Notes under the pieces: model-generated
Seen by the model: the letters and a program-made list of their open reading frames with translations, nothing else
Databases searched by the model: none
What the model was told of the DNA's origin: nothing
Program-made: the position numbers and the translations under genes
Origin: Macrostomum lignano
Lineage: Eukaryota
NCBI GenBank assembly: GCA_002269645.1
Contig: NIVC01001217.1
Location: 1-64,000, forward strand
Reading direction: 5' to 3'
DNA length: 64,000 nt
Shown here: positions 1-53,285 of the stretch, one piece after another
How positions within the stretch are numbered: the stretch's first letter is position 1
Layout: each line of letters begins with the position of its first letter

Positions 1-16368
<16,368 letters not shown>

Positions 16369-17433: not shown

Positions 17434-25910
<8,477 letters not shown>

Positions 25911-41484: not shown

Positions 41485-42229
41485 TGTATGATGCTATTTA
41501 TAGTTGCATTCTTCAAATTGGAACAGTTAGCAGCAAAAATTCTTAATGCCTAATCAGTGACATTCTTATCAATTATTGCTGGCTAGTAGCACATTGCAAC
41601 CACAGCAAGAAAGTTATACATTGTATGAAGTTACAGAAAATTTACAAGCTATAGATATGGATATAAAAAAGACTATGGGAAATTTTTTGAGATATGGCTA
41701 TAGATATTAATATAGGAAAATTTTGCTTATAGTGAACTTCTATTATAAATTACAGAACAAATCTTTTGGTTTATAGAAACTTTTATAATTCAAAGTTAAA
41801 CACAAATATTGTATAACGATTCTAATATGCAGAAATCAATTATCTTTATATTGTCTAAATTTATTTTAAATTTGTAGTTTAAAAATGATGCAAATAATTT
41901 TTTATCATTCAATAATTTTTAATATCTTGCTATATCATATAGACTATTCTAAAAAGTTTCAGCAATCAAAAATTATTTTACTGATCATATTAATTGAATT
42001 TAATAAATTACTAAATCAAAAGTACTACCTACCTTGAAACTCATTCAAAACTTTTTTGTCCTTTGCAAATGTGTTATTTCTTAATGCATATTAAGTAGAG
42101 ACTAAGTTCTATAATTATATATTAACTGCTATGAGTATATTGATATTGCTATATGATGCATTATTTAGTTAATCTTACTAAAAAGCTAGGCTTATTTATA
42201 AATCTAATATGTTGGCTCATATCCATATA

Positions 42230-42985
42230 GCAAATATCAAGCAATGCAAATTTCAGGCTAAGCAAATGCCAGGCTAAGCAAATATCAAGCAATGCAAATT
42301 TCAGGCTAAGCAAATACCAGGCTAAGCAAATGTCAGGCTATGCAAATGTCAGGCTAAGCAAATGCCAGGCTAAGCAAATGCCAGGCTAAGCAAATGTCAG
42401 GCTATGCAAATGTCAGGCAATGCAAATGTCAGGCAATGCAAATGTCAGGCTAAGCAAATGTCAGGCTAAGCAAATGTCAGGCAATGCAAATTTCAGGCTA
42501 AGCAAATGCCAGGCTAAGCAAATGTCAGGCTAAGCAAATGCCAGGCTAAGCAAATTTCAGGCTAAGCAAATGCCAGGCTAAGCAAATGTCAGGCTAAGCA
42601 AATGTCAGGCTAAGCAAATGCCAGGCTAAGCAAATGCCAGGCTAAGCAAATTTCAGGCTAAGCAAATGCCAGGCTAAGCAAATGTCAGGCTAAGCAAATG
42701 TCAGGCTAAGCAAATGTCAGGCAATGCAAATGCCAGGCTAAGCAAATGCCAGGCTAAGCAAATGCCAGGCTAAGCAAATGCCAGGCTAAGCAAATGCCAG
42801 GCTAAGCAAATGTCAGGCTAAGCAAATGTCAGGCTAAGCAAATGTCAGGCAATGCAAATGTCAGGCAATGCAAATGTCAGGCTAAGCAAATGCCAGGCTA
42901 AGCAAATGTCAGGCTAAGCAAATGCCAGGCTAAGCATTTGTCAGGCTAAGCAAAAGTCAGGCAATGCAAATGCCAGGCTAAGCAA
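42230..42985. repeat. 16-bp minisatellite GCTAAGCAAATG(T/C)CAG
   Basis: About 46 copies ending about 100 bp before the COX16 ATG. Confidence 0.97.
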
Positions 42986-43085
42986 ACGCATTATAGTATC
43001 TGTGAGTAGTCTGCAGTGCAATGCAATTTTTGCTGTTTTGCTGCCAAACCCAGCTAGACTGCAAGAATCTCCTTAGAAAGCAGCA

Positions 43086-43394
43086 ATGATACCGGGCAAG
43101 GGCAGCAGTTTTTATTCTTTAATCCGGCCCGGCCTGCCGTTCATAGGAGGCCTGGTGGCCCTGGCTTTCATGGTGGGGTCAATGGCCGACACTCGGCACA
43201 GGCTGCATCGAATTAAAAGCTTGCAAAGCAACGCTTATTACGACGCGTCAATGAAGATACCAGATGCGCCGAAGATGCTGAACGACATGCTTGGCAATCG
43301 CGACATCGATAATTGGGACAATCTGCGCGGACCCCGACCGTGGGAGGACAGTCGGGCCATGCAGACCGAGCAGCGCAAAGTTCAGTCCAAGTGA
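43086..43394 (+). CDS. COX16: Cytochrome c oxidase assembly protein COX16 homolog
   Basis: 102 aa, one TM segment (GLPFIGGLVALAFMVG) and the diagnostic C-terminal motif D.D.WDNLRGPRPWED. Confidence 0.87.
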   Translation: MIPGKGSSFYSLIRPGLPFIGGLVALAFMVGSMADTRHRLHRIKSLQSNAYYDASMKIPDAPKMLNDMLGNRDIDNWDNLRGPRPWEDSRAMQTEQRKVQSK

Positions 43395-43762
43395 TCAGTT
43401 GAAGGGCCTGGTGCCAAATAATGGCGTCATCAGCTCTTACATTATTGAATGACGAGGTCTGTTTCTTCCCCAAGAAGTTCATATCGTGCCATATTGGACA
43501 ACTCGGGTAAAAGGACTCTACAGTCGCAATTCCTAAGTTTTCTGCCTGTTCTGTCTGTAGAATCCTACTCATTTAATTACGTAATAATGAACACCTTCAC
43601 ATGGATTTACCTGAATCCCCATAGTTAATTATAGAATTTAAATCAGAATAAGAAATTTACAGAATATTGTTTATGAACAAGGGAACACAGCTTTTTAATT
43701 AATTTAGTGATATAAGAACTTATTAGAATCTAAATTAAAATTAGTTAACACTGATTCTGAAC

Positions 43763-44223
43763 CATATATACTTGAATAACTAGATGGGCCGCTCAGCACA
43801 TTTGCATGTAAGCTACTTTCAGTTCAGTAGCAAGTTAAACAGAAGCATTTTAATGTATTTTTAAAGCCAAGGCTCAATTTATTGGCTCTTACCCCCCCCC
43901 CCCCCCCGCATAAACTTCGGCCTCTAGCCGCGCCTTTCCACCCCACCCCAATTTTTATTGCCTTTCTCGGAATTCCAGCCTAAAGCTGCCATGTACATTT
44001 CAGTGGACTGGCTAATGTACATTATTGCTGAACCAATTAGCAAGCTGTTTACGCCTGCAAGCTTTTGTTGGGCTTCTGAACTTATCAAAGTTAGTTCAGC
44101 TGCCTTTTTTTATAAAATTAGCTTATGTAGTCTTTGCTACTGAACTGAAAGTAGAAAACTGTTTTGCTAAGTTCACTAAGTATATATGCCTGAGTGGCTC
44201 ATCTAGTCATTCTAGAATCTGTG
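43763..44223. mobile_element. CACAG-terminated MITE, copy 2 (uninterrupted)
   Basis: Colinear with 28107-28299 + 29786-30037; inner inverted repeat CTACTTTCAGTTCAGTAG / CTACTGAACTGAAAGTAG. Confidence 0.85.
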
Positions 44224-44619
44224 CACTAGAATCAGAGGCAGACGAATCAGTTATATTTGTCCCTAATTTCTGAAGCCCATTTTCTCATTAATGGCTTGCA
44301 GTCTCCAATCATCGATTGTCCGTTGTATATAAAATAGAGCTCCTGTCCTAGAAAAGTAAATGTCCCGAATGAACTGTTGGACTCTGTGGACTGGGGCGCA
44401 TTTCATGATTTTGTTATTTTATATGACAAATACACCTTTAAATACGGTACTCGTACACTGCCGGCCGCCATCTTATTGGTATTGGCATTGTTTTTTTCTG
44501 AATTGAGAAATTAACCTTAAGGTCTCCATTGCTACTATAAGTAACTGAAATAGGATATTACTGTTTTTTAGCCATGTTTTGTAAAACGTTGCATTTCTCT
44601 TGTGGGTGCACGCAAATCG

Positions 44620-44910
44620 ACTGCCACAATTTAACTGCGGATAATTTGACAATTTCACTGTGGACAATGTCACTGGGGGGGGAATTTGACTGCGGACAAT
44701 TTCACTGGGGGGGCAATTTGACTGCGGACAATTTCACTGGGGGGCAATTTGACTGCGGACAATTTCACTGGGGGGCAATTTGACTGCGGACAATTTCACT
44801 GCGGACAATGTCACTGGGGGGCAATTTGACTGTGGACAATTTCACTGGGGGCAATTTGACTGTGGATAAAATTACTGCAGAAAATATGACTGTGGACTGC
44901 GGAAAATCGA
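44620..44910. repeat. About 31-bp repeat GACTGCGGACAATTTCACTGGGGGGCAATTT
   Basis: Tandem modules, possibly the interior of a MITE. Confidence 0.8.
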
Positions 44911-45607
44911 CTGCTTCAAAAAAGACTCCATGCTATTTATGCATGCTCGCATTATATGCAAGGCTAACAACGCTCTTTACACAAGCAAAAATGCAAGCTA
45001 CTTTAGCTTTTGACTAATAGCTTTTCTGATGGCACAGGTATATGGATTGCATTTTAAAAAAACTCTGAAAGATTCTATTTAGAAAGATTCTAAAATATGG
45101 AAGTCTGGGAATAATATTAGGTGTAGTAAATTTATAAATTCTCAGTGGGATTTGTTAATGTTTTGAGAAATCTCAATTTATCTTTGTATTTAAACGTTGT
45201 TGTTGTGACGACTAAATGGCATCAGTATGATACTTCACCGAACTACGCATACATGTAGACGTAAAAAAGTGTGACAACGTGCTAATCTTCAAGAGTGTCA
45301 TTTTGTCTGTAGTGTACATAGCTTTGAAAGTTAAAATGGATTAGTTCGATTAAATTGCTTGCTTGCATTAGTAATGCCAACGCTGTGCTAAAAATAGACT
45401 AGCGGAGAGAGGGATTCCCCAGCCCTCCGGCCGGATTGCAACACACATGACGCTTGTTGCTAAAAATAGATTCCGCCTTGCATGGCCTATTTAAATGCAG
45501 TGAGCGGGCGCAAGTGACAAGACTGCTAAGGTTAGAGAGGCATTAAAAGAAATTCGCGTTTGATTTTGTTCTGCCATATTCTAAGAATTCTTGCAATACT
45601 TCCAGTC

Positions 45608-47550
45608 ATGTCATTATCATCTTTCGAGCCCCACACAAAGCAGCAGGTGCTAGAAGAGATTAGCGCAATTACCGAACAGCTTAGCGTCCGTTGTCGAGTG
45701 ATTGATAATGTCGGCTCATTCCAGTTTGTAGTCAGCCTGGCCTGCGACCGGTCACCGCAGCTGGCCGTTAAATTGCAACTGACTGGTGAGATATTAAATA
45801 TTGTATACTGGTGTTAATTGGTGCCATAATAATAGGTTCAGATGGGTTAAAGATTTTTTCATGATGGTGGAATTAGGGGTTCCAAATTTAGGCTGAGAAA
45901 TACAGAGATTTCGAGATCGGGATTCCCTTCCACTTCTTTTGTCATGCTACGAGCGTAATTGTAATTTAAAAAAACTCTGAACTGTCGCTACGACAATTGA
46001 CTGCCGAACGTAATTCTAAATTACGAGTAACCTACACCCTTACCAGGGCCTATATGTACCTTATACCTTAATTCCTAAACCCTGCACTAAACCTTAATTC
46101 CTAAACCCTACACTAAACCTTAATTCCTAAACCCTGCACTAAACCTTAATTCCTAACCCTGCACTAAACCTTAATTCCTAAACCCTACACTAAACCTTAA
46201 TTTCTAAACCCTACACTAAACCCTAATTCCTAAACCCAGCACTAAACCTTAATTCCTAAACCCTACACTAAACCCTACACTAAACCTTAATTTCTAAACC
46301 CTACACTAAACCCTAATTCCTAAACCCTACACTAAACCTTAATTCCTAAACCCTGCACTAAATTCTTCCCTGCCTGAGCGACTGTCATGTTGATACAAGC
46401 ATAAGCAGTGGTTGGTAGTACAGTAAGTAGTATGTAGCGCACATGTAAAAGCTAAATTATTTAGAGATTCGATTCCATCGCACCAACACGGCAGACCAAT
46501 ACCCGTTGGAGCCGCCCTGCGTGTCGGTCCGCTCCGCCCCAGCTACGGAAGCTGAACTGGCCACACTGGCCAACTCGCTGCGCGGCCGAGCCATGCTGCA
46601 ACAGCTGGCCGCTGCCGCCTTCCCTGCGGGAACTGCTGCTCTGTCAGCTGTGAATGAAGCCGCGGAAGTCTCCAACAGCAAGCAGGCGGCCGCCCCGCCG
46701 TCCCGCCAGCGTCGCTACGAGTCCGCCCGCACCAAGCGACGCCGGCGAGCCGCCGCGGCCGCCGCAGCCGACGAGTCCAAGCAGGCGGCCAGTTTTAAGG
46801 CCAAACTGAAGCCAATGAAAACCGCCGACGATGTCTTGAAGCGAATCCAATGGGACGAGGGCATTCCGGCCCAGGACATCTTCATCGGCTATCTGGACAG
46901 GTTCAAAGGCGTAGTTGAAAAACAATTCGACGAATTCAGCTGGGAGGACATTGCCAGCGTCGACTATTACACGTTCGTGATCCCCCGGCACCGGATTTGC
47001 TACTTCAAGTACAGGCGCGCGGTCATCTGGGACAAGCGGCGCCGGCTTGACCTGGTGTTCGGCTCCACGGCCACTGCCGACGATGTCGCTGAAGGCGCCG
47101 ACATCTACAAGCTCATCGCCAACTACCGGGACGAGGACTATCCGGACGGCGAGGCGTCCATGGCCTCGGCCGCGTCGTCCTCAAACTCGGAGGCTGACGA
47201 ATCCGACCAATCTGATGAATCTGACGACGACGGCGTCCAGGTGCGGCTCGACCGGCGCGTCGTCGAGTCCGCAGCTCAGCGGTGCGGCGATGACGGCGAC
47301 AGTCTGAGCGAAGGCGAGGACCAGGCCCAACTTTCCGGCACCGCCAAGGTCTACTGGCGCGACCTGCTGCGCCCAAATTTCTTTGTCTGCGTCCGGGTTG
47401 TCGATCCGGCCGTCGCCTCCGCCGCTGCCGCCGTGCAGGCCAGCATCGTCCGGCAGCAGCCCGCCTTCGCCTCCTGCTGCATCCCGCCGGAGATGCTGCA
47501 CTGCACCCTGGCCACCCTGCGACTGGACTCCGCAGAGCAGGTGAGGATGC

Positions 47551-47585
<35 letters not shown>

Positions 47586-47592
47586 GTGTCTG

Positions 47593-47663
<71 letters not shown>

Positions 47664-47731
47664 GTCTGTCTGTCTTAGTGTCTGTCTGTCTGTCTTAGTG
47701 TCTGTCTGTCTTAGTGTCTGTCTGTCTGTCC

Positions 47732-47775
<44 letters not shown>

Positions 47776-47805
47776 TAGTGTCTGTCTGTCTGTGTCTGTC
47801 TGTCC

Positions 47806-47897
<92 letters not shown>

Positions 47898-48401
47898 GTG
47901 TCCCTCTATCTGTCTGTCTACACTGTCACTCAATCATTCAACCAGGTGTCCGCCTGCTCCGCTGCCCTGTCCGCCGCCCGCTCCGAGCTGCTGGCCAGCC
48001 TGCCGCGGGAGCCGCTCCGCCTGCGCGGCCTCGGCTGCTTCTTCGGCCGGGTGCTGCACGCCCGAGTCGACCCGGCGCCCGCCGGCCTGACCGACTTTGT
48101 CGACCACCTGCAGGCGGTGATCCGGGCCGCCGGGCTGCAGGTGCTGGAGACGCACGAGTTCGTGCCGCACGTCACTCTGCTGAAGACCTCCCGACCGGTG
48201 TCCCGGCAGCTGGGCTCGCGCCTCATCCCGCCGCGCCTCTACGCCGGCTCCGAGGGCGTCGATTTTGGCGAACAACCGCTGGACGCCGTCTACCTGTGCA
48301 GCATGGAGAAGGCGCGCGGACCGGACGGATTCTATATGGCCCCAGGCTGCGTGAAGTTCGTGCGCACCGTGCTGGAGCAGGCGGCGCCCAGCCACGACTG
48401 A
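45608..48401 (+). CDS. LENG9: LENG9-like protein with N-terminal RWD domain: RWD - MJ1316 (DUF504) - acidic linker - AKAP7-like 2H phosphoesterase
   Basis: Exons 45608-45785, 46495-47540, 47946-48401 (phases 1 and 0; 559 aa). RWD: [41 protein letters not shown]1316: [47 protein letters not shown]. 2H motifs LHCTL and PHVTL. Confidence 0.9.
46060..46345. repeat. 26-bp minisatellite AAACCTTAATTCCTAAACCCTACACT
   Basis: About 11 copies in intron 1 of the LENG9-like gene. Confidence 0.93.
47550..47910. repeat. (TGTC)n microsatellite
   Basis: Fills intron 47541-47945. Confidence 0.99.
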
Positions 48402-48462
48402 CTGCTTCACAAGTTAACCTAATCTAATGTACCGCACCGGTCCACCATTGACGCCCGTTTAG

Positions 48463-48970
48463 CTGCTTCTTCCGCCCCCTTATCCGCTTCTTCCGCCCCC
48501 TTATCCACTTCTTCCGCCCCCTTATCCGCTTCTTCCGCCCCCTTATCCGCTTCTTCCGCCCCTTATCCGCTTCTTCCGCCCCCTTATCCGCTTCTTCCGC
48601 CCCTTATCCGCTTCCTCCGCCCCCTTATCCGCTTCTTCCGCCCCCTTATCCGCTTCTTCCGCCCCCTTATCCGCTTCTTCCGCCCCCTTATCCGCTTCTT
48701 CCACCCCCTTATCCGCTTTTTCCGCCCCCTTATCCGCTTCTTCCGCCCCTTATCCGCTTCTTCCGCCCCTTATCCGCTTCCTCCGCCCCTTTATCCACTT
48801 CTTCCGCCCCCTTATCCGCTTCTTCCGCCCCCTTATCCGCTTCTTCCGCCCCCTTATCCGCTTCTTCCGCCCCCTTATCCGCTTCATCCGCCCCCTTATC
48901 CGCTTCTTCCGCCCACTTATCCGCTTCTTCCGCCCCCTTATCCGCTTCTTCCGCCCCTTTGTCCGCTTCT
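48463..48970. repeat. 21-bp minisatellite TCCGCTTCTTCCGCCCCCTTA
   Basis: About 24 copies starting about 60 bp after the LENG9-like stop codon. Confidence 0.97.
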
Positions 48971-49707
48971 TCCGCCCCCCAGCCCCCTATTCTTCCCCTT
49001 AGAATCCCAAATATTGTCTCCCTATCCGTTCTCCTATTATTTTTTAAGCTCTTCTTTGTACCCATTTCCATTGTAACTTCTTATTATTTCCAATCAAAGA
49101 AATAAAAATTAATATCATTAAAACAACTATACATACCTGTTATGTATTCTGTGAGGATTTCTCTTAATTATTTTGGCTGAGGACATCGATGTACTGGGCT
49201 TTACTGTGCCATCTATTGGTCAAAAAATAATATCATATGATTATACGAGCAGCATGATTGCAGCTTTTTACTTTCTTTCACTTAAACAAGAATTTTGCCT
49301 GTGATTGTCTATGCTCTTTCATTTATTTAGTCCAGTTTTATAGAGGTCAAAATTTCATATTCTCACTATAAGGAGTAACAAAAAGATGAAAACTTTCTCA
49401 TGCAAACTTAATTCCAGTTTGTTGTTTACTATTTTGTGCTTATTTTTTACAAATATACTACATTAACTACTTAAAGTGAAGTGGCAATCATTTTTATGCT
49501 TATTTTTATTCCAGTAATAAATATAGATGTCTTTCCTGCTATTAAATAAATCTTTTCGATACATATCGGACAGCTCTTAGTGAAGCGTGTATACACTGTT
49601 AAGGTACTGCCATTAACGATTAGCAATTATTGCATACTTATTCTGCACAAATTGGCGTTATCCTTACCGGCTGAAGAAAGCAGCAGTAGAAAAAAATGTT
49701 TTTATTT

Positions 49708-49713
49708 AAAAAA
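49708..49713 (-). terminator. RNA polymerase III terminator (T-run) of tRNA-Gln
   Basis: TTTTTT 2 nt downstream of the tRNA 3' end on the minus strand; further T-runs follow. Confidence 0.85.
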
Positions 49714-49715
49714 GA

Positions 49716-49787
49716 AGGTCCCACCGAGATTCGAACTCGGGTCGCAGGATTCAGAGTCCTGAGTGCTAACCGCTACACCATGGGACC
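49716..49787 (-). tRNA. trnQ-CTG: tRNA-Gln, anticodon CTG
   Basis: GGTCCCATGGTGTAGCGGTTAGCACTCAGGACTCTGAATCCTGCGACCCGAGTTCGAATCTCGGTGGGACCT: 72 nt, intact cloverleaf, A and B boxes. Confidence 0.98.
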
Positions 49788-49884
49788 GCTATCAAATGCA
49801 GAGTTACTGTTGCTTGATTATTTGTACACAGACTGTCTACCAAGGGAAAAATCTAGGGTAATCCCCTTCCAGTAGCTTCGGTAG

Positions 49885-52800
49885 TTGCCCCCTCGGTGGC
49901 TGTCGGACGCCTGGATGAGGCGCTATCCGCACGGCAGCTTCATCAACGTCGGCCTTTGGAAGCTGCGCATCCGCTCCTACGAGGCCGACCCTCCCCGTGG
50001 CAGTGAGCAGGGCGGGCGGGATGCTGAGGCGGCCGGGGCCGAGGCGCGAGCTTCTGCTCAGGCTGCCAAAGCAAACCGCCCCGCCCGGCAGCACGGCCGC
50101 GCGGGTAAAGCTGAGCGCGCTGCTGAGGGCGGAGGCGACCGACGCCCGGCGCGCAGCACCAAGCGGCGCGGCCTGTACCAGCGCGCAGCTGAGGCGGTCC
50201 GCACCGCCAAAATCACCCAGCTGAGGCGAGAGGTCGCCGGGACGCCTAGGCGCACGAGTTCGTCCAGGGAGGGTGGGGACGACCCAGCTGGGCCCAACCC
50301 CTCGGGGCAGGGCCGACTGGAGACGGACCCGCCTGCCCAGGCGGCTGGCTGCTCCAGGGCATTGGGCCAGTCTGAAGCGGAGGACCCCATGGCTGGTAGG
50401 CGAAGGGCGGCGAACGCTGCCTATTGCCTTCCGACCAACCGGGGGCCTTTTGCTGAAGAGGAGCCCATGGACACCGGCGACCCCGACCCGAAGCTGGTGA
50501 GCGCCGAGGAGGAGGAGGAACTCCTGGCGACTGCAACACCCGATCTGCAATGATGCCAGCGGCTACCTGGTGTCTGCAGATCAACACCCAGCACTGCGTG
50601 GCGGCGTCAGTCAACCTGATGCGTACGACAGAGCAACAACTTCCGGGCCTGGTCTTCGTGCAGGAGCCCTGGATGACTAAAGGTAAGCCAAATAATGTGC
50701 CATCTGGCTACCACTGTTTTTGCATGGCGGACTCTCAGCCTCGCCCAAGATCTCTGGTCTTTGCTGCAAAAGCTTTTGAGGCATGGATGAGACCTGATCT
50801 CTCGACTGGGGACATCTGTGTTGTTCAAATCAATAACCTCATTCCAAATAAACCTGTGCTGGTAGCATCTGCCTATTTCCCAGGCGATGCCCCAGTAGTC
50901 TGCGACGCGCTAGTCAACCTCATTGACTTACGCTACGTCCCGTCGGTTCGAGCTGCTCATTGCAGGGGATGTGAACGCACACCACCTGCATTGGGGCAAC
51001 AGGAACCCCAATAACAGAGGCGAGGAGCTGCTGGCCTATGTCAGCAGCACAAACCTCAATTTCTGTAACGTGGGCAATGAACGAACGTTCAGGGGGGCCG
51101 TAGCGCAGCGGTAGCGCAGCTGCTCTGGTGTGCCAGCGACCCAGGCTCGATTCCAAGTGCAGTCACATTAATTTGGGGCTGAATTGGAATCTCGGCTTGG
51201 CTCTGCTAGTGCAATTAACGGCCTTGAGAGCCAACCCCCCCAAGGCGCAGTGAAGTGTACATGCCTAACGATAATATAAGTTACATGTAGGGCCGCTGTA
51301 CACTCCTGTGTGAGTGTGTGCCTGCGTACGGATCCGCGCGCTTGTATGCCTGCTCAGGGGAGTCGGCGGAATGGGCAGTAATTCCTCTCGCCGGTTGTGC
51401 GCCAGGGTGCACACAACCCCCCTGTCTCTAAAAAAAAGAGCCAATGCCAGAGCTTTCCGCAGTCACGGGCTGGCGAGTGTGGGACGAGGACTCGCTCTCG
51501 GACCACCGCTTTATCCGCTTTTGCATTGGGCCGACCAAGCAAAAGCCCAAGGTCACTTGGAGTCGAAACGTCAGGAATACCGATTGGGCCGCCTAATTTG
51601 GCTCGAAGCTGAGCCGCGGCCTTCGCGATCTTGTCCCCCTCCCCCCCCCCAGTGACCTCTCTGACTGCCAGGTGGTGGATGATCTCGCCTCCTCCCTGGG
51701 CGGGGCGATCACCACTGCCTTTGAAGCAGCCTGCCCTCTAAAAGACTACAAAGGCAAGAAATCTGCTCCCTGGTGGAACCCAGAGCTCAGGGCCCTTCGG
51801 CGCCGAGCCAGGACCCTCCAAAGGCGAGCGCTCAAAACCAAAGACCCATCTGAAAGAGAGGCCTATACCCGTGCGATCCACGAGTTTAAGGGCCAAGTCA
51901 GAACGGCCAAGACGGCCACGTGGCGCCAATATTGCGAAGGGCTTGAGGGCTCTCGCCCCGTAGCCCGCGTGGTTAAGGCACTCACTAATGACCGTTTTTC
52001 TAAACTGTTGTGAAGAGACCTGATGGCTCGGTCACAGAGAGCTCTGAAGAGACTCTAGAGCTAATGCTCAACAGTTTCTTCCCTAAATCTCCGACTCAGC
52101 AGGGCCCGCCTGACCACACCGTGGGAGGGCAAGGCCTAGCAAAGTCTATGATCACCAAAGACCGCATTATTAGAGCGGCAAGGTCCTTTAACCCGTTCAA
52201 GGCGCCTGGGCCCGACGGCATCTACCCAGCGTTCTTGCACGAGGCGGTAAAAAACCACCGCTTCCAGGACCTCCTCTGTCGTCTCCTCCGAGCTTGTGTG
52301 GAGCTGGGCTATGTACCAGTTACGTGGAGAGAGGCCCTGGTGGTCTTTATCCCCAAGCCTGGAAAGAGCGACTACCAATCGGTGAAGGCCTTCAGGCCTA
52401 TCAGCCTCACCTCCTTCTGCCTTAAGCTCCTCGAGAGACTGGTGCTTTGGCGCCTACTTTCGGTCGAGCTGAAGCGCTTCCCACTCTCGCAGAACCAGCA
52501 CGCCTTTTGCGCGGGCAGGTCTACCGAGAGTGCCCTCCATGTCATTGTTGACTTCCTGGAGAGGGCCGTTCTTAACAGCGGCTTTGCCCTCTCGCTTTTC
52601 TGGACATTGAGGGGGCCTTCGACAACGTCATCTTCGAGGCCTTCTGCAGAGCCCTGGAATCCAGGGCCACGCACCATCATCACCTTGTCCGGTGGATCAT
52701 GTTCATGATCCGAAACCGCACTGTTGTGGCCCACCTGAACGGCAGCTCTCTCTGGGCGCCTGTCCCGAAAGGGGGCCCCAGGGCGGAGTTCTCACCCCCG

Positions 52801-52965
52801 TTCTCTGGAACATGGTCAAGGATGAGTTGCTTTGCAGTGATCTCCATGACCCCATTCTCAAGGTGGGCTATGCCGATGATGTGACCGCGACATGCGCGGG
52901 CCCCTCGGTTGATACCATCAGAGATCTTCTGCAGGGCTTTCTGGGACGAGCGGAGCGTTGGGCAG
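49885..52965 (+). mobile_element. Degenerate LOA/R1-type LINE: ORF1 C-terminus + ORF2 (APE endonuclease, reverse transcriptase), truncated at both ends
   Basis: ORF1 to 50553, overlapping ORF2 at 50550 (ATGATG). APE: LQINTQH..FVQEPW..AGDVNAHH..WG..SLSDHRFIRF. RT: KAPGPDGI, FRPISLTSF, QHAF, LDIEGAFDNV, PQGGVL, YADD (52869-52880). Several frameshifts and stops. Confidence 0.93.
51092..51437 (+). mobile_element. tRNA-derived SINE inserted into the LINE endonuclease
   Basis: Head GGGGCCGTAGCGCAGCGGTAGCGC (A box)..GGCTCGATTCC (B box), about 270-bp body, A8 tail; the APE frame resumes immediately after (VTGWRVWDEDSLSDHRF). Confidence 0.8.
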
Positions 52966-53285
52966 TAAAACCTATGGGTGGACATGCCAAATGCTTTGTC
53001 CCCCACCCCATCTTTTGGGACCAGTTATGGAAATCAATAATTTTGTTTCAGGGCACCAAAATATAGCACCTGCGGCGCCAAAATGAGTGCATGTGGCGCC
53101 AAAACGAGTGCCCAAATGAGTGCTTGCGGCGCCCAAATGAGTGCTTGCGACGCTAAAATGAGCGCTGACAAACACCGAGTCTCAAAATAATGTACATGTA
53201 CATGTAGGAATCTTAGTCATGTACATGTAAAATTCTTGGCTTTGTCCCCCCCCCCATCATAAAATCCATCATGGCGACGTCCCTG
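52966..53285. mobile_element. Partial hAT-like element truncating the LINE RT
   Basis: Right end reads CAGGGACGTCGCC on the minus strand; internal about 21-bp GCGGCGCC(A/C)AAATGAGTGC repeats; left TIR not found. Confidence 0.45.

What the first reader, a model, noticed from the sequence alone, without database searches (positions are those of the whole stretch)
45608..48401. RWD + MJ1316 + 2H phosphoesterase fusion: candidate ribosome-linked RNA end-repair protein
The ORF track shows only two unconnected pieces. Splicing in an upstream exon (45608-45785, G|GTGAG to CAG|AC at 46495) completes an RWD fold ([26 protein letters not shown]) in front of a LENG9-type MJ1316 domain and a 2H phosphoesterase with both HxT motifs intact. 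Established knowledge: MJ1316 is predicted to recognise RNA 2',3'-cyclic-phosphate ends, 2H enzymes hydrolyse cyclic or 2'-5' phosphodiesters, and the RWD domains of GCN2, IMPACT and RNF14 engage GCN1 on stalled ribosomes. Human LENG9 lacks an RWD as far as I know. Inference: this protein may bring cyclic-phosphate sensing and processing to collided ribosomes or cleaved tRNA/mRNA. Whether the architecture is already catalogued cannot be judged from the sequence.
Basis: partly seen in the sequence, partly recalled or inferred. Interest (0 to 1): 0.75.

Follow-up and report, generated by a model that had tools for sequence, protein, structure and literature searches.

The report
Flatworm LENG9 gene with RWD domain
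This is the already annotated Macrostomum lignano copy of LENG9, a conserved animal gene of untested function that joins a protein-docking RWD domain to two RNA-end-processing domains, and this layout is the normal invertebrate form rather than a new fusion.

Summary
Exons 45608-45785, 46495-47540 and 47946-48401 (+), with GT..AG at both introns, give a 559-aa protein.

- **Domains:** Pfam finds MJ1316 (E 4.7e-24) and an AKAP7-type 2H phosphoesterase (E 1.7e-29). Both HxT motifs (H395/T397, H483/T485) are conserved across 25 orthologues.
- **RWD:** the N-terminus is a real but divergent RWD domain. It scores 23.2 bits alone against a cutoff of 22.8. Eleven of 12 orthologous N-termini hit RWD, and the family profile hits the RNF25 RWD at 7e-16. 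The AlphaFold2 model has the alpha-4beta-2alpha topology, and its top PDB fold matches are all RWD domains.
- **Not new:** the window is M. lignano contig NIVC01001217.1. GenBank PAA70636.1, from an RNA-seq-guided annotation, equals the model minus Met1. A UniProt fragment of it is already named "RWD domain-containing protein".
- **Ordinary architecture:** RWD-(CCCH)-MJ1316-2H is the usual LENG9 layout in corals, molluscs, annelids, nemerteans, echinoderms, hemichordates and amphioxus. The vertebrate and arthropod sequences returned lack the RWD. Coral and sponge orthologues add a P-loop kinase (and HAD), which points to RNA end-healing.

No functional study of LENG9 was found. The proposed link to GCN1 and collided ribosomes is plausible but untested. 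Modest interest.

The parts
45608..45785 (+). Exon 1: ATG plus codons 1-59 and the first base of codon 60. Encodes RWD helix 1 and strands 1-3.
   Evidence: Identical in GenBank PAA70636.1 and UniProt A0A1I8IH14. No differences from the paralogous copy in L001.
45786..46494 (+). Intron 1 (709 bp, GT..AG). Contains a 26-bp tandem array at 46065-46362.
   Evidence: Splice sites are conserved in the L001 copy.
46495..47540 (+). Exon 2: rest of codon 60 to codon 408. Encodes the rest of the RWD, the basic linker, MJ1316, the acidic linker and the first half of the 2H domain.
47541..47945 (+). Intron 2 (405 bp, GT..AG), almost wholly a (CTGT)n microsatellite at 47550-47919.
   Evidence: This intron is 1616 bp in the L001 copy.
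47946..48401 (+). Exon 3: codons 409-559 plus TGA. Encodes the second half of the 2H domain.
45635..46670 (+). RWD domain coding region (residues ~10-118, interrupted by intron 1). The YPxxxP motif Y62-P67 lies at 46500-46517.
   Evidence: Pfam RWD 23.2 bits on the isolated N-terminus; 11 of 12 orthologues hit RWD. Family profile against PDB: RNF25 RWD 6.9e-16, RWDD1 3.6e-15, GCN2 2.8e-9. AlphaFold2 topology H-EEEE-H-H. Top Foldseek hits are RWD domains.
46671..46814 (+). Basic, alanine-rich linker (residues 119-166, including [13 protein letters not shown] and KAKLK). Predicted disordered. Lacks the CCCH zinc finger that sits here in coral, echinoderm, hemichordate, amphioxus and vertebrate orthologues.
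   Evidence: pLDDT below 50 for residues 118-163. Alignment columns 180-260. Pfam on orthologues.
46815..47132 (+). MJ1316 domain (residues 167-272; Pfam match 167-240 = 46815-47036). This is the most conserved block of the protein.
   Evidence: PF04457 E 4.7e-24, covering 1-75 of 75 profile positions. 29 invariant columns between K163 and S250. Folded in the model. No solved structure found by sequence.
47133..47363 (+). Acidic, serine-rich linker (residues 273-349). Predicted disordered.
   Evidence: pLDDT below 50 for residues 274-348. Acidic in all orthologues.
47364..48371 (+). AKAP7-type 2H phosphoesterase domain (residues ~350-550, interrupted by intron 2). HxT motif 1 (H395-C-T397) lies at 47499-47507 and HxT motif 2 (H483-V-T485) at 48168-48176.
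   Evidence: PF10469 E 1.7e-29. PDB by sequence: AKAP18 and kinetoplastid mS64, about 5e-14. Foldseek: AKAP18 central domain, target-normalised TM 0.87-0.90, rmsd about 2 A. H395, T397 and H483 invariant, T485 nearly so.

Best explanation
The locus is one of at least three near-identical Macrostomum lignano copies of the LENG9 orthologue, in the RWD-containing layout that is normal for non-vertebrate animals. It is a three-exon gene.

The product has three folded modules joined by disordered linkers, the first basic and the second acidic.

**Shown here:** the gene model, the three domains, the intact 2H active-site motifs, and orthology to LENG9.

**Inferred mechanism:**
- The MJ1316 module binds an RNA 3' end that carries a 2',3'-cyclic phosphate. 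This is a published computational prediction, not an experimental result.
- The adjacent 2H domain hydrolyses that cyclic phosphate, or a 2'-5' phosphodiester. This would be an end-healing step of RNA repair or processing.
- The RWD is a non-catalytic docking module that places the enzyme on a protein partner still to be identified.

Coral and sponge orthologues that add a P-loop kinase, a second CPDase-like stretch and a HAD phosphatase support the end-healing reading.
For: - **Gene model and identity:**. The annotation is RNA-seq guided (PMC5730564).
- **Orthology:** best named hits outside Macrostomum are "leukocyte receptor cluster member 9" of Biomphalaria, Aplysia, Mercenaria and Lingula, at E 1e-87 to 1e-101 over 95% of the length.
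- **Domains:**
- **Active site:** H395, T397 and H483 invariant and T485 nearly so across 25 orthologues; MJ1316 is the most conserved block.
- **2H fold:** nearest to the AKAP18 central domain, then kinetoplastid mitoribosomal AKAP7_NLS proteins, ASCC1 and LigT/CPDases.
- **Fusion evidence for end-healing:**
  - Coral P0037: RWD + CCCH + MJ1316 + 2H + AAA_33.
  - Sponge Geodia LENG9 (P0087): CCCH + MJ1316 + 2H + AAA_33 + tRNA_lig_CPD-like stretch.
  - P0089: as P0087, plus HAD_SAK_1 ("Swiss Army Knife RNA repair proteins").
  - All.
- **MJ1316 role:** described as recognising RNA 2'-3' cyclic ends and as fused to RNA-repair domains across eukaryotes (PMC6514570).
Against: - No enzymatic or genetic data exist for any LENG9 in the searchable literature.
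- The MJ1316 ligand is only a computational prediction, and no solved structure was found.
- The closest solved 2H relatives include proteins whose role may not be catalytic. AKAP18 was crystallised with AMP, and the kinetoplastid proteins are components of the mitochondrial small ribosomal subunit.
- The Macrostomum RWD is the weakest of its family. It has an ~8-residue deletion after ELATL and a degenerate last helix, so its docking function may be reduced.
- The AAA_33 hit of coral P0037 scores 25.3 bits, below the cutoff of 27. The sponge hits pass.
Confidence: 0.8

Rival explanations
1. First reader's model. [quoted passage not shown] There it processes cyclic-phosphate ends of cleaved mRNA or tRNA.
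For: - The N-terminus is a true RWD.
- RWDs of GCN2, Yih1/IMPACT, Gir2 and RNF14 bind GCN1 on stalled ribosomes.
- The family profile's best solved matches include RNF25 and RWDD1, the human counterpart of Gir2 by my own knowledge.
- ASCC1, another 2H protein, is a structural neighbour. By established knowledge it belongs to the ASCC complex, whose helicase splits collided ribosomes.
Against: - There is no direct evidence.
- Many RWD proteins have other partners, and RNF25-GCN1 binding was not reliably detected.
- The RWD was lost in the vertebrate, arthropod and, apparently, parasitic-flatworm sequences returned, while MJ1316-2H was kept. The core function therefore does not need it.
- The Macrostomum RWD is degenerate in helices 2-3.
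Confidence: 0.2
2. The 2H domain is a 2',5'-oligonucleotide phosphodiesterase that limits an OAS-type immune signal, like AKAP7 and the viral ns2 and VP3 enzymes. It would not be an RNA-end healer.
For: - The closest solved fold is the AKAP18/AKAP7 central domain (target-normalised TM 0.87-0.90).
- Rotavirus VP3 and MHV ns2 2',5'-phosphodiesterases are also recovered.
- That AKAP7 can degrade 2-5A is established knowledge, from my own memory.
Against: - The invariant fusion to MJ1316, and in corals and sponges to a P-loop kinase, a tRNA-ligase-type CPDase-like stretch and a HAD domain, points to polynucleotide ends rather than a small second messenger.
- The viral enzymes are far weaker matches (E 1e-4 to 1e-2).
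Confidence: 0.12
3. The protein is mainly a non-catalytic RNA- or nucleotide-binding scaffold, and the RWD in Macrostomum is a decaying remnant on its way to loss.
For: - The top sequence matches in PDB are structural mitoribosomal proteins with this fold, and AKAP18.
- The Macrostomum RWD has the lowest RWD score of its family and an internal deletion.
- The nearest relatives, parasitic flatworms at 44-46% identity, apparently lack the RWD.
Against: - Both HxT motifs are invariant or nearly so across 25 animals, which is expected for an active enzyme.
- The RWD is predicted to fold well in the deeper alignment, with 10-residue block means of pLDDT between 80 and 94 for residues 11-100.
- Exon 1 is identical between two copies that differ at 2% overall.
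Confidence: 0.08

Closest known systems
LENG9 (leukocyte receptor cluster member 9), vertebrate form
   Same: Orthologous MJ1316 and AKAP7-type 2H domains in the same order, with an acidic linker between them and a basic stretch before MJ1316. Both HxT motifs are shared.
   Different: The vertebrate proteins returned have a CCCH zinc finger and no RWD. The window protein has an RWD and no CCCH. Function is unknown in both.
Invertebrate LENG9 / "RWD domain-containing protein" of molluscs, annelids, nemerteans, echinoderms, hemichordates and amphioxus
   Same: Same RWD - basic linker - MJ1316 - acidic linker - 2H layout. 29-40% identity over ~95% of the length. The lophotrochozoan members also lack the CCCH finger.
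   Different: The window RWD is more divergent: an ~8-residue deletion in helix 2, a degenerate last helix, and 23 bits against up to 77 bits in Ptychodera. There is also a small insertion at the end of the MJ1316 region.
Coral and sponge LENG9-like "Swiss Army Knife" RNA-repair proteins (P0037, P0083, P0087, P0089)
   Same: Shared (RWD)-CCCH-MJ1316-2H core.
   Different: They carry extra C-terminal AAA_33 P-loop kinase, tRNA_lig_CPD-like and HAD_SAK_1 modules that the window protein lacks.
AKAP7/AKAP18 central domain (PDB 2vfk, 2vfy, 5jj2)
   Same: Closest solved 2H fold: target-normalised TM 0.87-0.90, rmsd ~2 A, 24-25% identity, both HxT motifs aligned.
   Different: AKAP7 has no MJ1316 or RWD and carries a PKA-anchoring helix. 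It is a paralogous family, not the orthologue.
ASCC1 (KH + 2H phosphoesterase; PDB 8tly, 8tuk)
   Same: An AKAP7-like 2H fold joined to an RNA-binding module. By established knowledge it is part of a complex whose helicase acts on collided ribosomes and in alkylation repair. That gives a precedent for a 2H enzyme docked to such machinery.
   Different: It uses a KH domain rather than MJ1316, has no RWD, and is a much weaker match (E ~1e-9).
RWD domains of RNF25, RWDD1, RWDD3 and GCN2
   Same: Same fold and YPxxxP motif. Profile E-values run from 7e-16 to 3e-9, and these are the top Foldseek hits.
   Different: In those proteins the RWD is attached to E3-ligase, DRG-binding, SUMO-pathway or kinase modules, not to RNA-end enzymes. 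The partner of the LENG9 RWD is unknown.

Membership tests
LENG9 orthologous group | Best named matches across the full length, outside the species itself, are LENG9 proteins. | tested here: met
   Named LENG9 of Biomphalaria, Aplysia, Mercenaria and Lingula at E 1e-87 to 1e-101 with 95% coverage. A reverse search from coral P0037 recovers the same family, including vertebrate LENG9.
LENG9 orthologous group | MJ1316 domain followed by an AKAP7-type 2H domain in one polypeptide. | tested here: met
   PF04457 at residues 167-240 (E 4.7e-24) and PF10469 at residues 353-542 (E 1.7e-29).
LENG9 orthologous group | CCCH zinc finger upstream of MJ1316 (a feature of vertebrate, deuterostome and cnidarian members). 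| tested here: not met
   No zf-CCCH hit, and the alignment shows a gap where CxxxxxxxCxxxxxCxxxH lies. It is also absent from mollusc, annelid and nemertean orthologues, so it does not define the whole group.
2H phosphoesterase superfamily (AKAP7_NLS / LigT-like) | Two H-x-T/S motifs on a duplicated alpha+beta fold. | tested here: met
   H395-C-T397 and H483-V-T485; H395, T397 and H483 are invariant. Fold match to AKAP18 with target-normalised TM 0.87-0.90, and to LigT and CPDases.
2H phosphoesterase superfamily | Histidine-dependent cyclic or 2'-5' phosphodiesterase activity. | not testable with these tools
   Needs an enzyme assay.
MJ1316 (PF04457) domain | Full-length match to the family profile above its gathering score. 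| tested here: met
   85.3 bits against a cutoff of 26.3, covering profile positions 1-75 of 75.
MJ1316 (PF04457) domain | Binding of RNA 2',3'-cyclic phosphate ends. | not testable with these tools
   Only a published prediction (PMC6514570). No solved structure found by sequence.
RWD domain (PF05773) | Profile match above the gathering score. | tested here: inconclusive
   19.6 bits in the whole protein, below the cutoff of 22.8. 23.2 bits for the isolated N-terminus, just above it. Settled by homology: 11 of 12 orthologous N-termini hit RWD (best 1.4e-17), and the family profile hits the RNF25 RWD at 6.9e-16.
RWD domain (PF05773) | Alpha - four antiparallel beta - two or three alpha fold, with a YPxxxP turn after strand 3. 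| tested here: met
   Model elements H11-24, E29-35, E38-45, E53-58, E68-71, H78-87, H94-116. Y62, P63 and P67 are nearly invariant. Foldseek ranks 1-6, 8 and 10-12 are RWD domains, followed by E2 enzymes.
GCN1-binding RWD proteins (GCN2, IMPACT/Yih1, Gir2/RWDD1, RNF14) | Direct binding to the GCN1 RWD-binding region, dependent on R2259 (yeast) or R2312 (human). | not testable with these tools
   No complex prediction or interaction data are available here. The literature shows that not every RWD binds GCN1.

The most novel reading that the evidence does not exclude
In most non-vertebrate animals the RWD of LENG9 is a client domain for GCN1, like those of GCN2, IMPACT, Gir2 and RNF14. LENG9 would then be an RNA 2',3'-cyclic-phosphate end-processing enzyme recruited to stalled or collided ribosomes. 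This would be an RNA-repair arm of ribosome quality control that the sampled vertebrates rewired by losing the RWD.
Probability: 0.15. Interest if true: 0.7.

Novelty: already known. Interest (0 to 1): 0.3.

Why it matters
As a sequence feature it adds little. The exact protein is in GenBank, UniProt already labels its N-terminus as RWD, and the architecture is catalogued in dozens of animals.

What is left is a reasonable open question about the whole LENG9 family. It is conserved from sponges to humans, joins a predicted cyclic-phosphate-end reader to a 2H phosphoesterase, and has no tested function.

The RWD in the ancestral form is a concrete handle for finding its partner, with GCN1 as one candidate. 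M. lignano has RNA-seq, genome and transgenesis resources that could be used to test this.

Tried and rejected
- **Chance ORF joining or mis-splicing:** rejected. GenBank PAA70636.1 is identical, a UniProt fragment spans the junction, splice sites are conserved in a second copy, and orthologues align across the junction.
- **N-terminus is not an RWD:** considered, because the whole-protein Pfam score was below the cutoff. Rejected by the orthologue census, the profile-to-PDB search and the fold search.
- **A second copy inside the window:** none found by tblastn.
- **Literature on LENG9 function, or on LENG9 together with RWD or GCN1:**
  - Only gene lists and expression signatures came up.
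  - MJ1316 appears in two papers, one of them relevant.
  - The primary source for MJ1316 (Burroughs and Aravind 2016) and the 2H classification (Mazumder et al. 2002) are not held. Whether they already describe the RWD fusion could not be checked.
  - The Mlig gene identifiers appear in no paper.
- **GCN1-contact residues of RWD domains in PMC5438488:** nothing usable.
- **Solved MJ1316 structure by sequence:** none.
- **dN/dS between copies:** only 11 differences, 6 synonymous and 5 not, which is too few to be informative.
- **Look-up of the exact spliced product in the contig index:** Solved by way of P0190.
- **Not run:** the representative-library HMMER job and the third homology search. 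The architecture census was already clear.
Full report
**1. What is in the sequence**

Reading 45000-49000 and joining 45608-45785, 46495-47540 and 47946-48401 gives a 1680-nt open frame of 559 codons plus TGA. Both introns have canonical GT..AG boundaries. The mechanical ORF list shows only separate pieces: 45560-45817, 46506-47678 and 47778-48401. Intron 1 (709 bp) holds a 26-bp tandem array. Intron 2 (405 bp) is almost entirely (CTGT)n.

**2. Is the splice real?**

Yes.
- The best database hit is a Macrostomum lignano protein at 99% identity over the whole length.
- Its 90% cluster holds three GenBank proteins and two UniProt fragments.
- PAA70636.1 (P0190, BOX15_Mlig024171g1) is identical to the model except that it lacks Met1.
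- UniProt A0A1I8IH14 (171 aa, named "RWD domain-containing protein") equals residues 1-171, including Met1 and the exon 1/2 junction.
- The contig stretch carrying P0190 (NIVC01001217.1, 42611-51401) matches window 42611-51401 base for base. The window is therefore the start of that contig, and the annotated gene lies at 45611-48401.
- The Mlig_3_7 annotation was built from STAR-mapped RNA-seq, StringTie/TACO and a de novo transcriptome (PMC5730564). The junctions therefore rest on transcript data.
- A second copy (NIVC01000296.1, L001) is 97.9% identical over 7.1 kb and keeps both pairs of splice sites. Its CDS differs at only 11 of 1680 positions, with none in exon 1. Its intron 2 has expanded to 1616 bp.
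- Orthologues from other phyla align without a break across the exon 1/2 junction.

**3. The domains**

Pfam on the whole product gives four relevant hits:
- AKAP7_NLS, residues 353-542, E 1.7e-29.
- MJ1316, residues 167-240, E 4.7e-24.
- Weaker LigT-type hits.
- RWD, residues 16-89, at 19.6 bits, below the cutoff of 22.8.

I tested the RWD call four further ways.
- The isolated N-terminus scores 23.2 bits, and 11 of 12 aligned orthologous N-termini hit RWD, the best at 1.4e-17.
- A profile of that alignment hits solved RWD domains: RNF25 6.9e-16, RWDD1 3.6e-15, RWDD3 2.6e-12 and GCN2 2.8e-9.
- AlphaFold2 gives helix, four strands, then two to three helices. Mean pLDDT is 73.5 with 12 sequences. 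With 25 sequences the 10-residue block means are 80-94 across residues 11-100.
- Foldseek against PDB returns RWD domains at ranks 1-6, 8 and 10-12, followed by E2 enzymes, which are the parent fold.

The YPxxxP signature is present (Y62, P63, P67). The Macrostomum domain is nevertheless the most eroded of the set, with an ~8-residue deletion after ELATL and a poorly conserved last helix.

The full-length model shows three folded modules, at residues 10-118, 167-272 and 350-550. They are separated by a disordered basic linker (118-163) and a disordered acidic linker (274-348).

The 2H module superposes on the AKAP18 central domain with a target-normalised TM-score of 0.87-0.90 and an rmsd of about 2 A. 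The next matches are kinetoplastid mitoribosomal AKAP7_NLS proteins, ASCC1, LigT and the CPDases.

In a 25-sequence alignment H395, T397 and H483 are invariant and T485 nearly so. MJ1316 is the most conserved block. No solved MJ1316 structure was found by sequence.

**4. How common is the architecture?**

Very common.
- Among the 50 hits to the window protein, 14 carry RWD + MJ1316, most of them also with the AKAP7-type domain.
- Among the 120 best hits to a coral orthologue, about 35 do.
- Named examples come from:
  - molluscs: Biomphalaria, Aplysia, Patella, Mercenaria, Mya, Dreissena, Arion, Nucella
  - an annelid: Owenia
  - nemerteans: Tubulanus, Lineus
  - echinoderms: Diadema, Lytechinus, Acanthaster, Patiria, Asterias, Anneissia, Antedon
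  - hemichordates: Ptychodera, Saccoglossus, Glandiceps
  - amphioxus
  - a coral: Montipora
- Many are already called LENG9 or "RWD domain-containing protein".
- Deuterostome and cnidarian members also have a CCCH finger between the RWD and MJ1316. The lophotrochozoan members, including this one, do not.
- The vertebrate sequences returned (amphibians, reptiles, coelacanth, lungfish, a marsupial) have CCCH + MJ1316 + 2H without an RWD. The chelicerate and crustacean sequences also lack it.
- The parasitic flatworm proteins, which are the closest relatives of the core at 44-46% identity, start just before MJ1316. Missed upstream exons cannot be excluded for those.
- The simplest reading is that RWD-CCCH-MJ1316-2H is ancestral to animals, and that different lineages dropped the RWD or the CCCH finger.

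**5. What it probably does**

Nothing experimental is known. Full-text searches for LENG9 returned only gene lists, cancer signatures and locus maps.

The inference rests on the domains.
- MJ1316 is described as recognising RNA 2'-3' cyclic ends and as fused to RNA-repair domains in many eukaryotes (PMC6514570). This is a prediction.
- 2H enzymes hydrolyse cyclic or 2'-5' phosphodiesters. This is established knowledge of the superfamily, and the solved neighbours are consistent with it.
- Fusion evidence strengthens the end-healing reading:
  - The coral orthologue adds a P-loop kinase (AAA_33, 25.3 bits, just under the cutoff).
  - The Geodia sponge LENG9 adds AAA_33 (29.2 bits) and a tRNA-ligase CPDase-like stretch.
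  - A related 1110-aa protein also adds a HAD_SAK_1 domain of the "Swiss Army Knife RNA repair proteins".
- Kinase plus CPDase is the healing pair of fungal and plant tRNA ligase, by established knowledge.

I therefore read the window protein as an RNA 3'-end reader plus a phosphodiesterase, with the RWD as a docking module.

**6. The ribosome/GCN1 idea**

It is fair but unproven.
- GCN1 binds the RWDs of GCN2, Yih1/IMPACT, Gir2 and RNF14 through one conserved region next to the GTPase centre of the stalled ribosome.
- RNF25 binding was not reliably seen, and humans have about 30 RWD proteins with diverse roles.
- The LENG9 RWD profile ranks RNF25, RWDD1 and RWDD3 ahead of GCN2, and that ranking does not decide the matter.
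- Repeated loss of the RWD with retention of MJ1316-2H shows that the catalytic core works without it.
- I give this reading about 0.15-0.2.

Two other rivals remain:
- A 2-5A-type phosphodiesterase role. AKAP7 is the nearest solved fold, and viral ns2 and VP3 are distant matches.
- A largely non-catalytic scaffold. The invariant histidines argue against this one.

**7. Novelty and verdict**

But the gene, its product and its domain content are already in public databases, and the architecture is the ordinary invertebrate LENG9.

I could not read Burroughs and Aravind 2016 or Mazumder et al. 2002. I therefore cannot say whether the RWD fusion has been discussed in print.

Interest is modest. 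The value lies in the family-wide open question, not in this locus.

Noticed in passing
window 43086-43394 (+): Single-exon 102-aa ORF matching Pfam COX16, the cytochrome c oxidase assembly protein (E 7.4e-7, 29.8 bits against a cutoff of 27). It lies 2.2 kb upstream of the LENG9 gene on the same strand and is also annotated in both assembly copies. M. lignano often has polycistronic, trans-spliced units (PMC5730564), so the two genes could share a transcriptional unit.
   Followed up: partly
window ~50550-53066 (+): A run of frame-shifted ORFs with weak reverse-transcriptase matches (RVT_1, E 5.5e-5 and 4.3e-4) and motifs such as FIPKPGK...RPISL and YADD. This looks like a degraded non-LTR retrotransposon 2 kb downstream of the gene.
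   Followed up: partly
window 48465-48979: A 21-bp tandem array (GCTTCTTCCGCCCCCTTATCC, 24.7 copies, 94% matches) starts 64 bp after the stop codon, probably within or just beyond the 3' UTR.
   Followed up: no
window 42229-42986; 47550-47919; 24268-24826: A 16-bp tandem array with 47 copies lies at 42229-42986. The (CTGT)n array of intron 2 has a related copy on the opposite strand at 24268-24826, seen as cross-matches. The same intron is 1616 bp in the paralogous copy against 405 bp here.
   Followed up: partly
L001 (NIVC01000296.1 432359-448360) and the cluster of P0001: The assembly holds at least three near-identical copies of the gene: PAA70636.1 (this window), PAA86058.1 (5 substitutions) and PAA79233.1 (2 substitutions). 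This fits the known redundancy and neopolyploidy of the M. lignano DV1 assembly (PMC5730564). All three are flagged 'partial' at the 5' end.
   Followed up: partly
window 45600-45610: A polypyrimidine stretch plus AG (cttccag) ends 2 nt before the ATG. About 39% of M. lignano genes are SL trans-spliced, so this could be a trans-splice acceptor. It was not tested, because the SL sequence was not to hand.
   Followed up: no
P0037, P0083, P0087, P0089 (coral and sponge orthologues; not in the window): Early-branching animal LENG9 proteins are much longer. They carry an AAA_33 P-loop kinase, a tRNA_lig_CPD-like stretch and a HAD_SAK_1 domain after the 2H domain. This suggests that bilaterian LENG9 is a trimmed-down multi-enzyme RNA-repair protein.
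   Followed up: partly
window 11996-13260 and 21228-22855 (+): Long overlapping ORFs (up to 517 aa) lie in GC-rich, strongly strand-skewed sequence with no meaningful Pfam match. They are probably low-complexity or repeat-derived.
   Followed up: no
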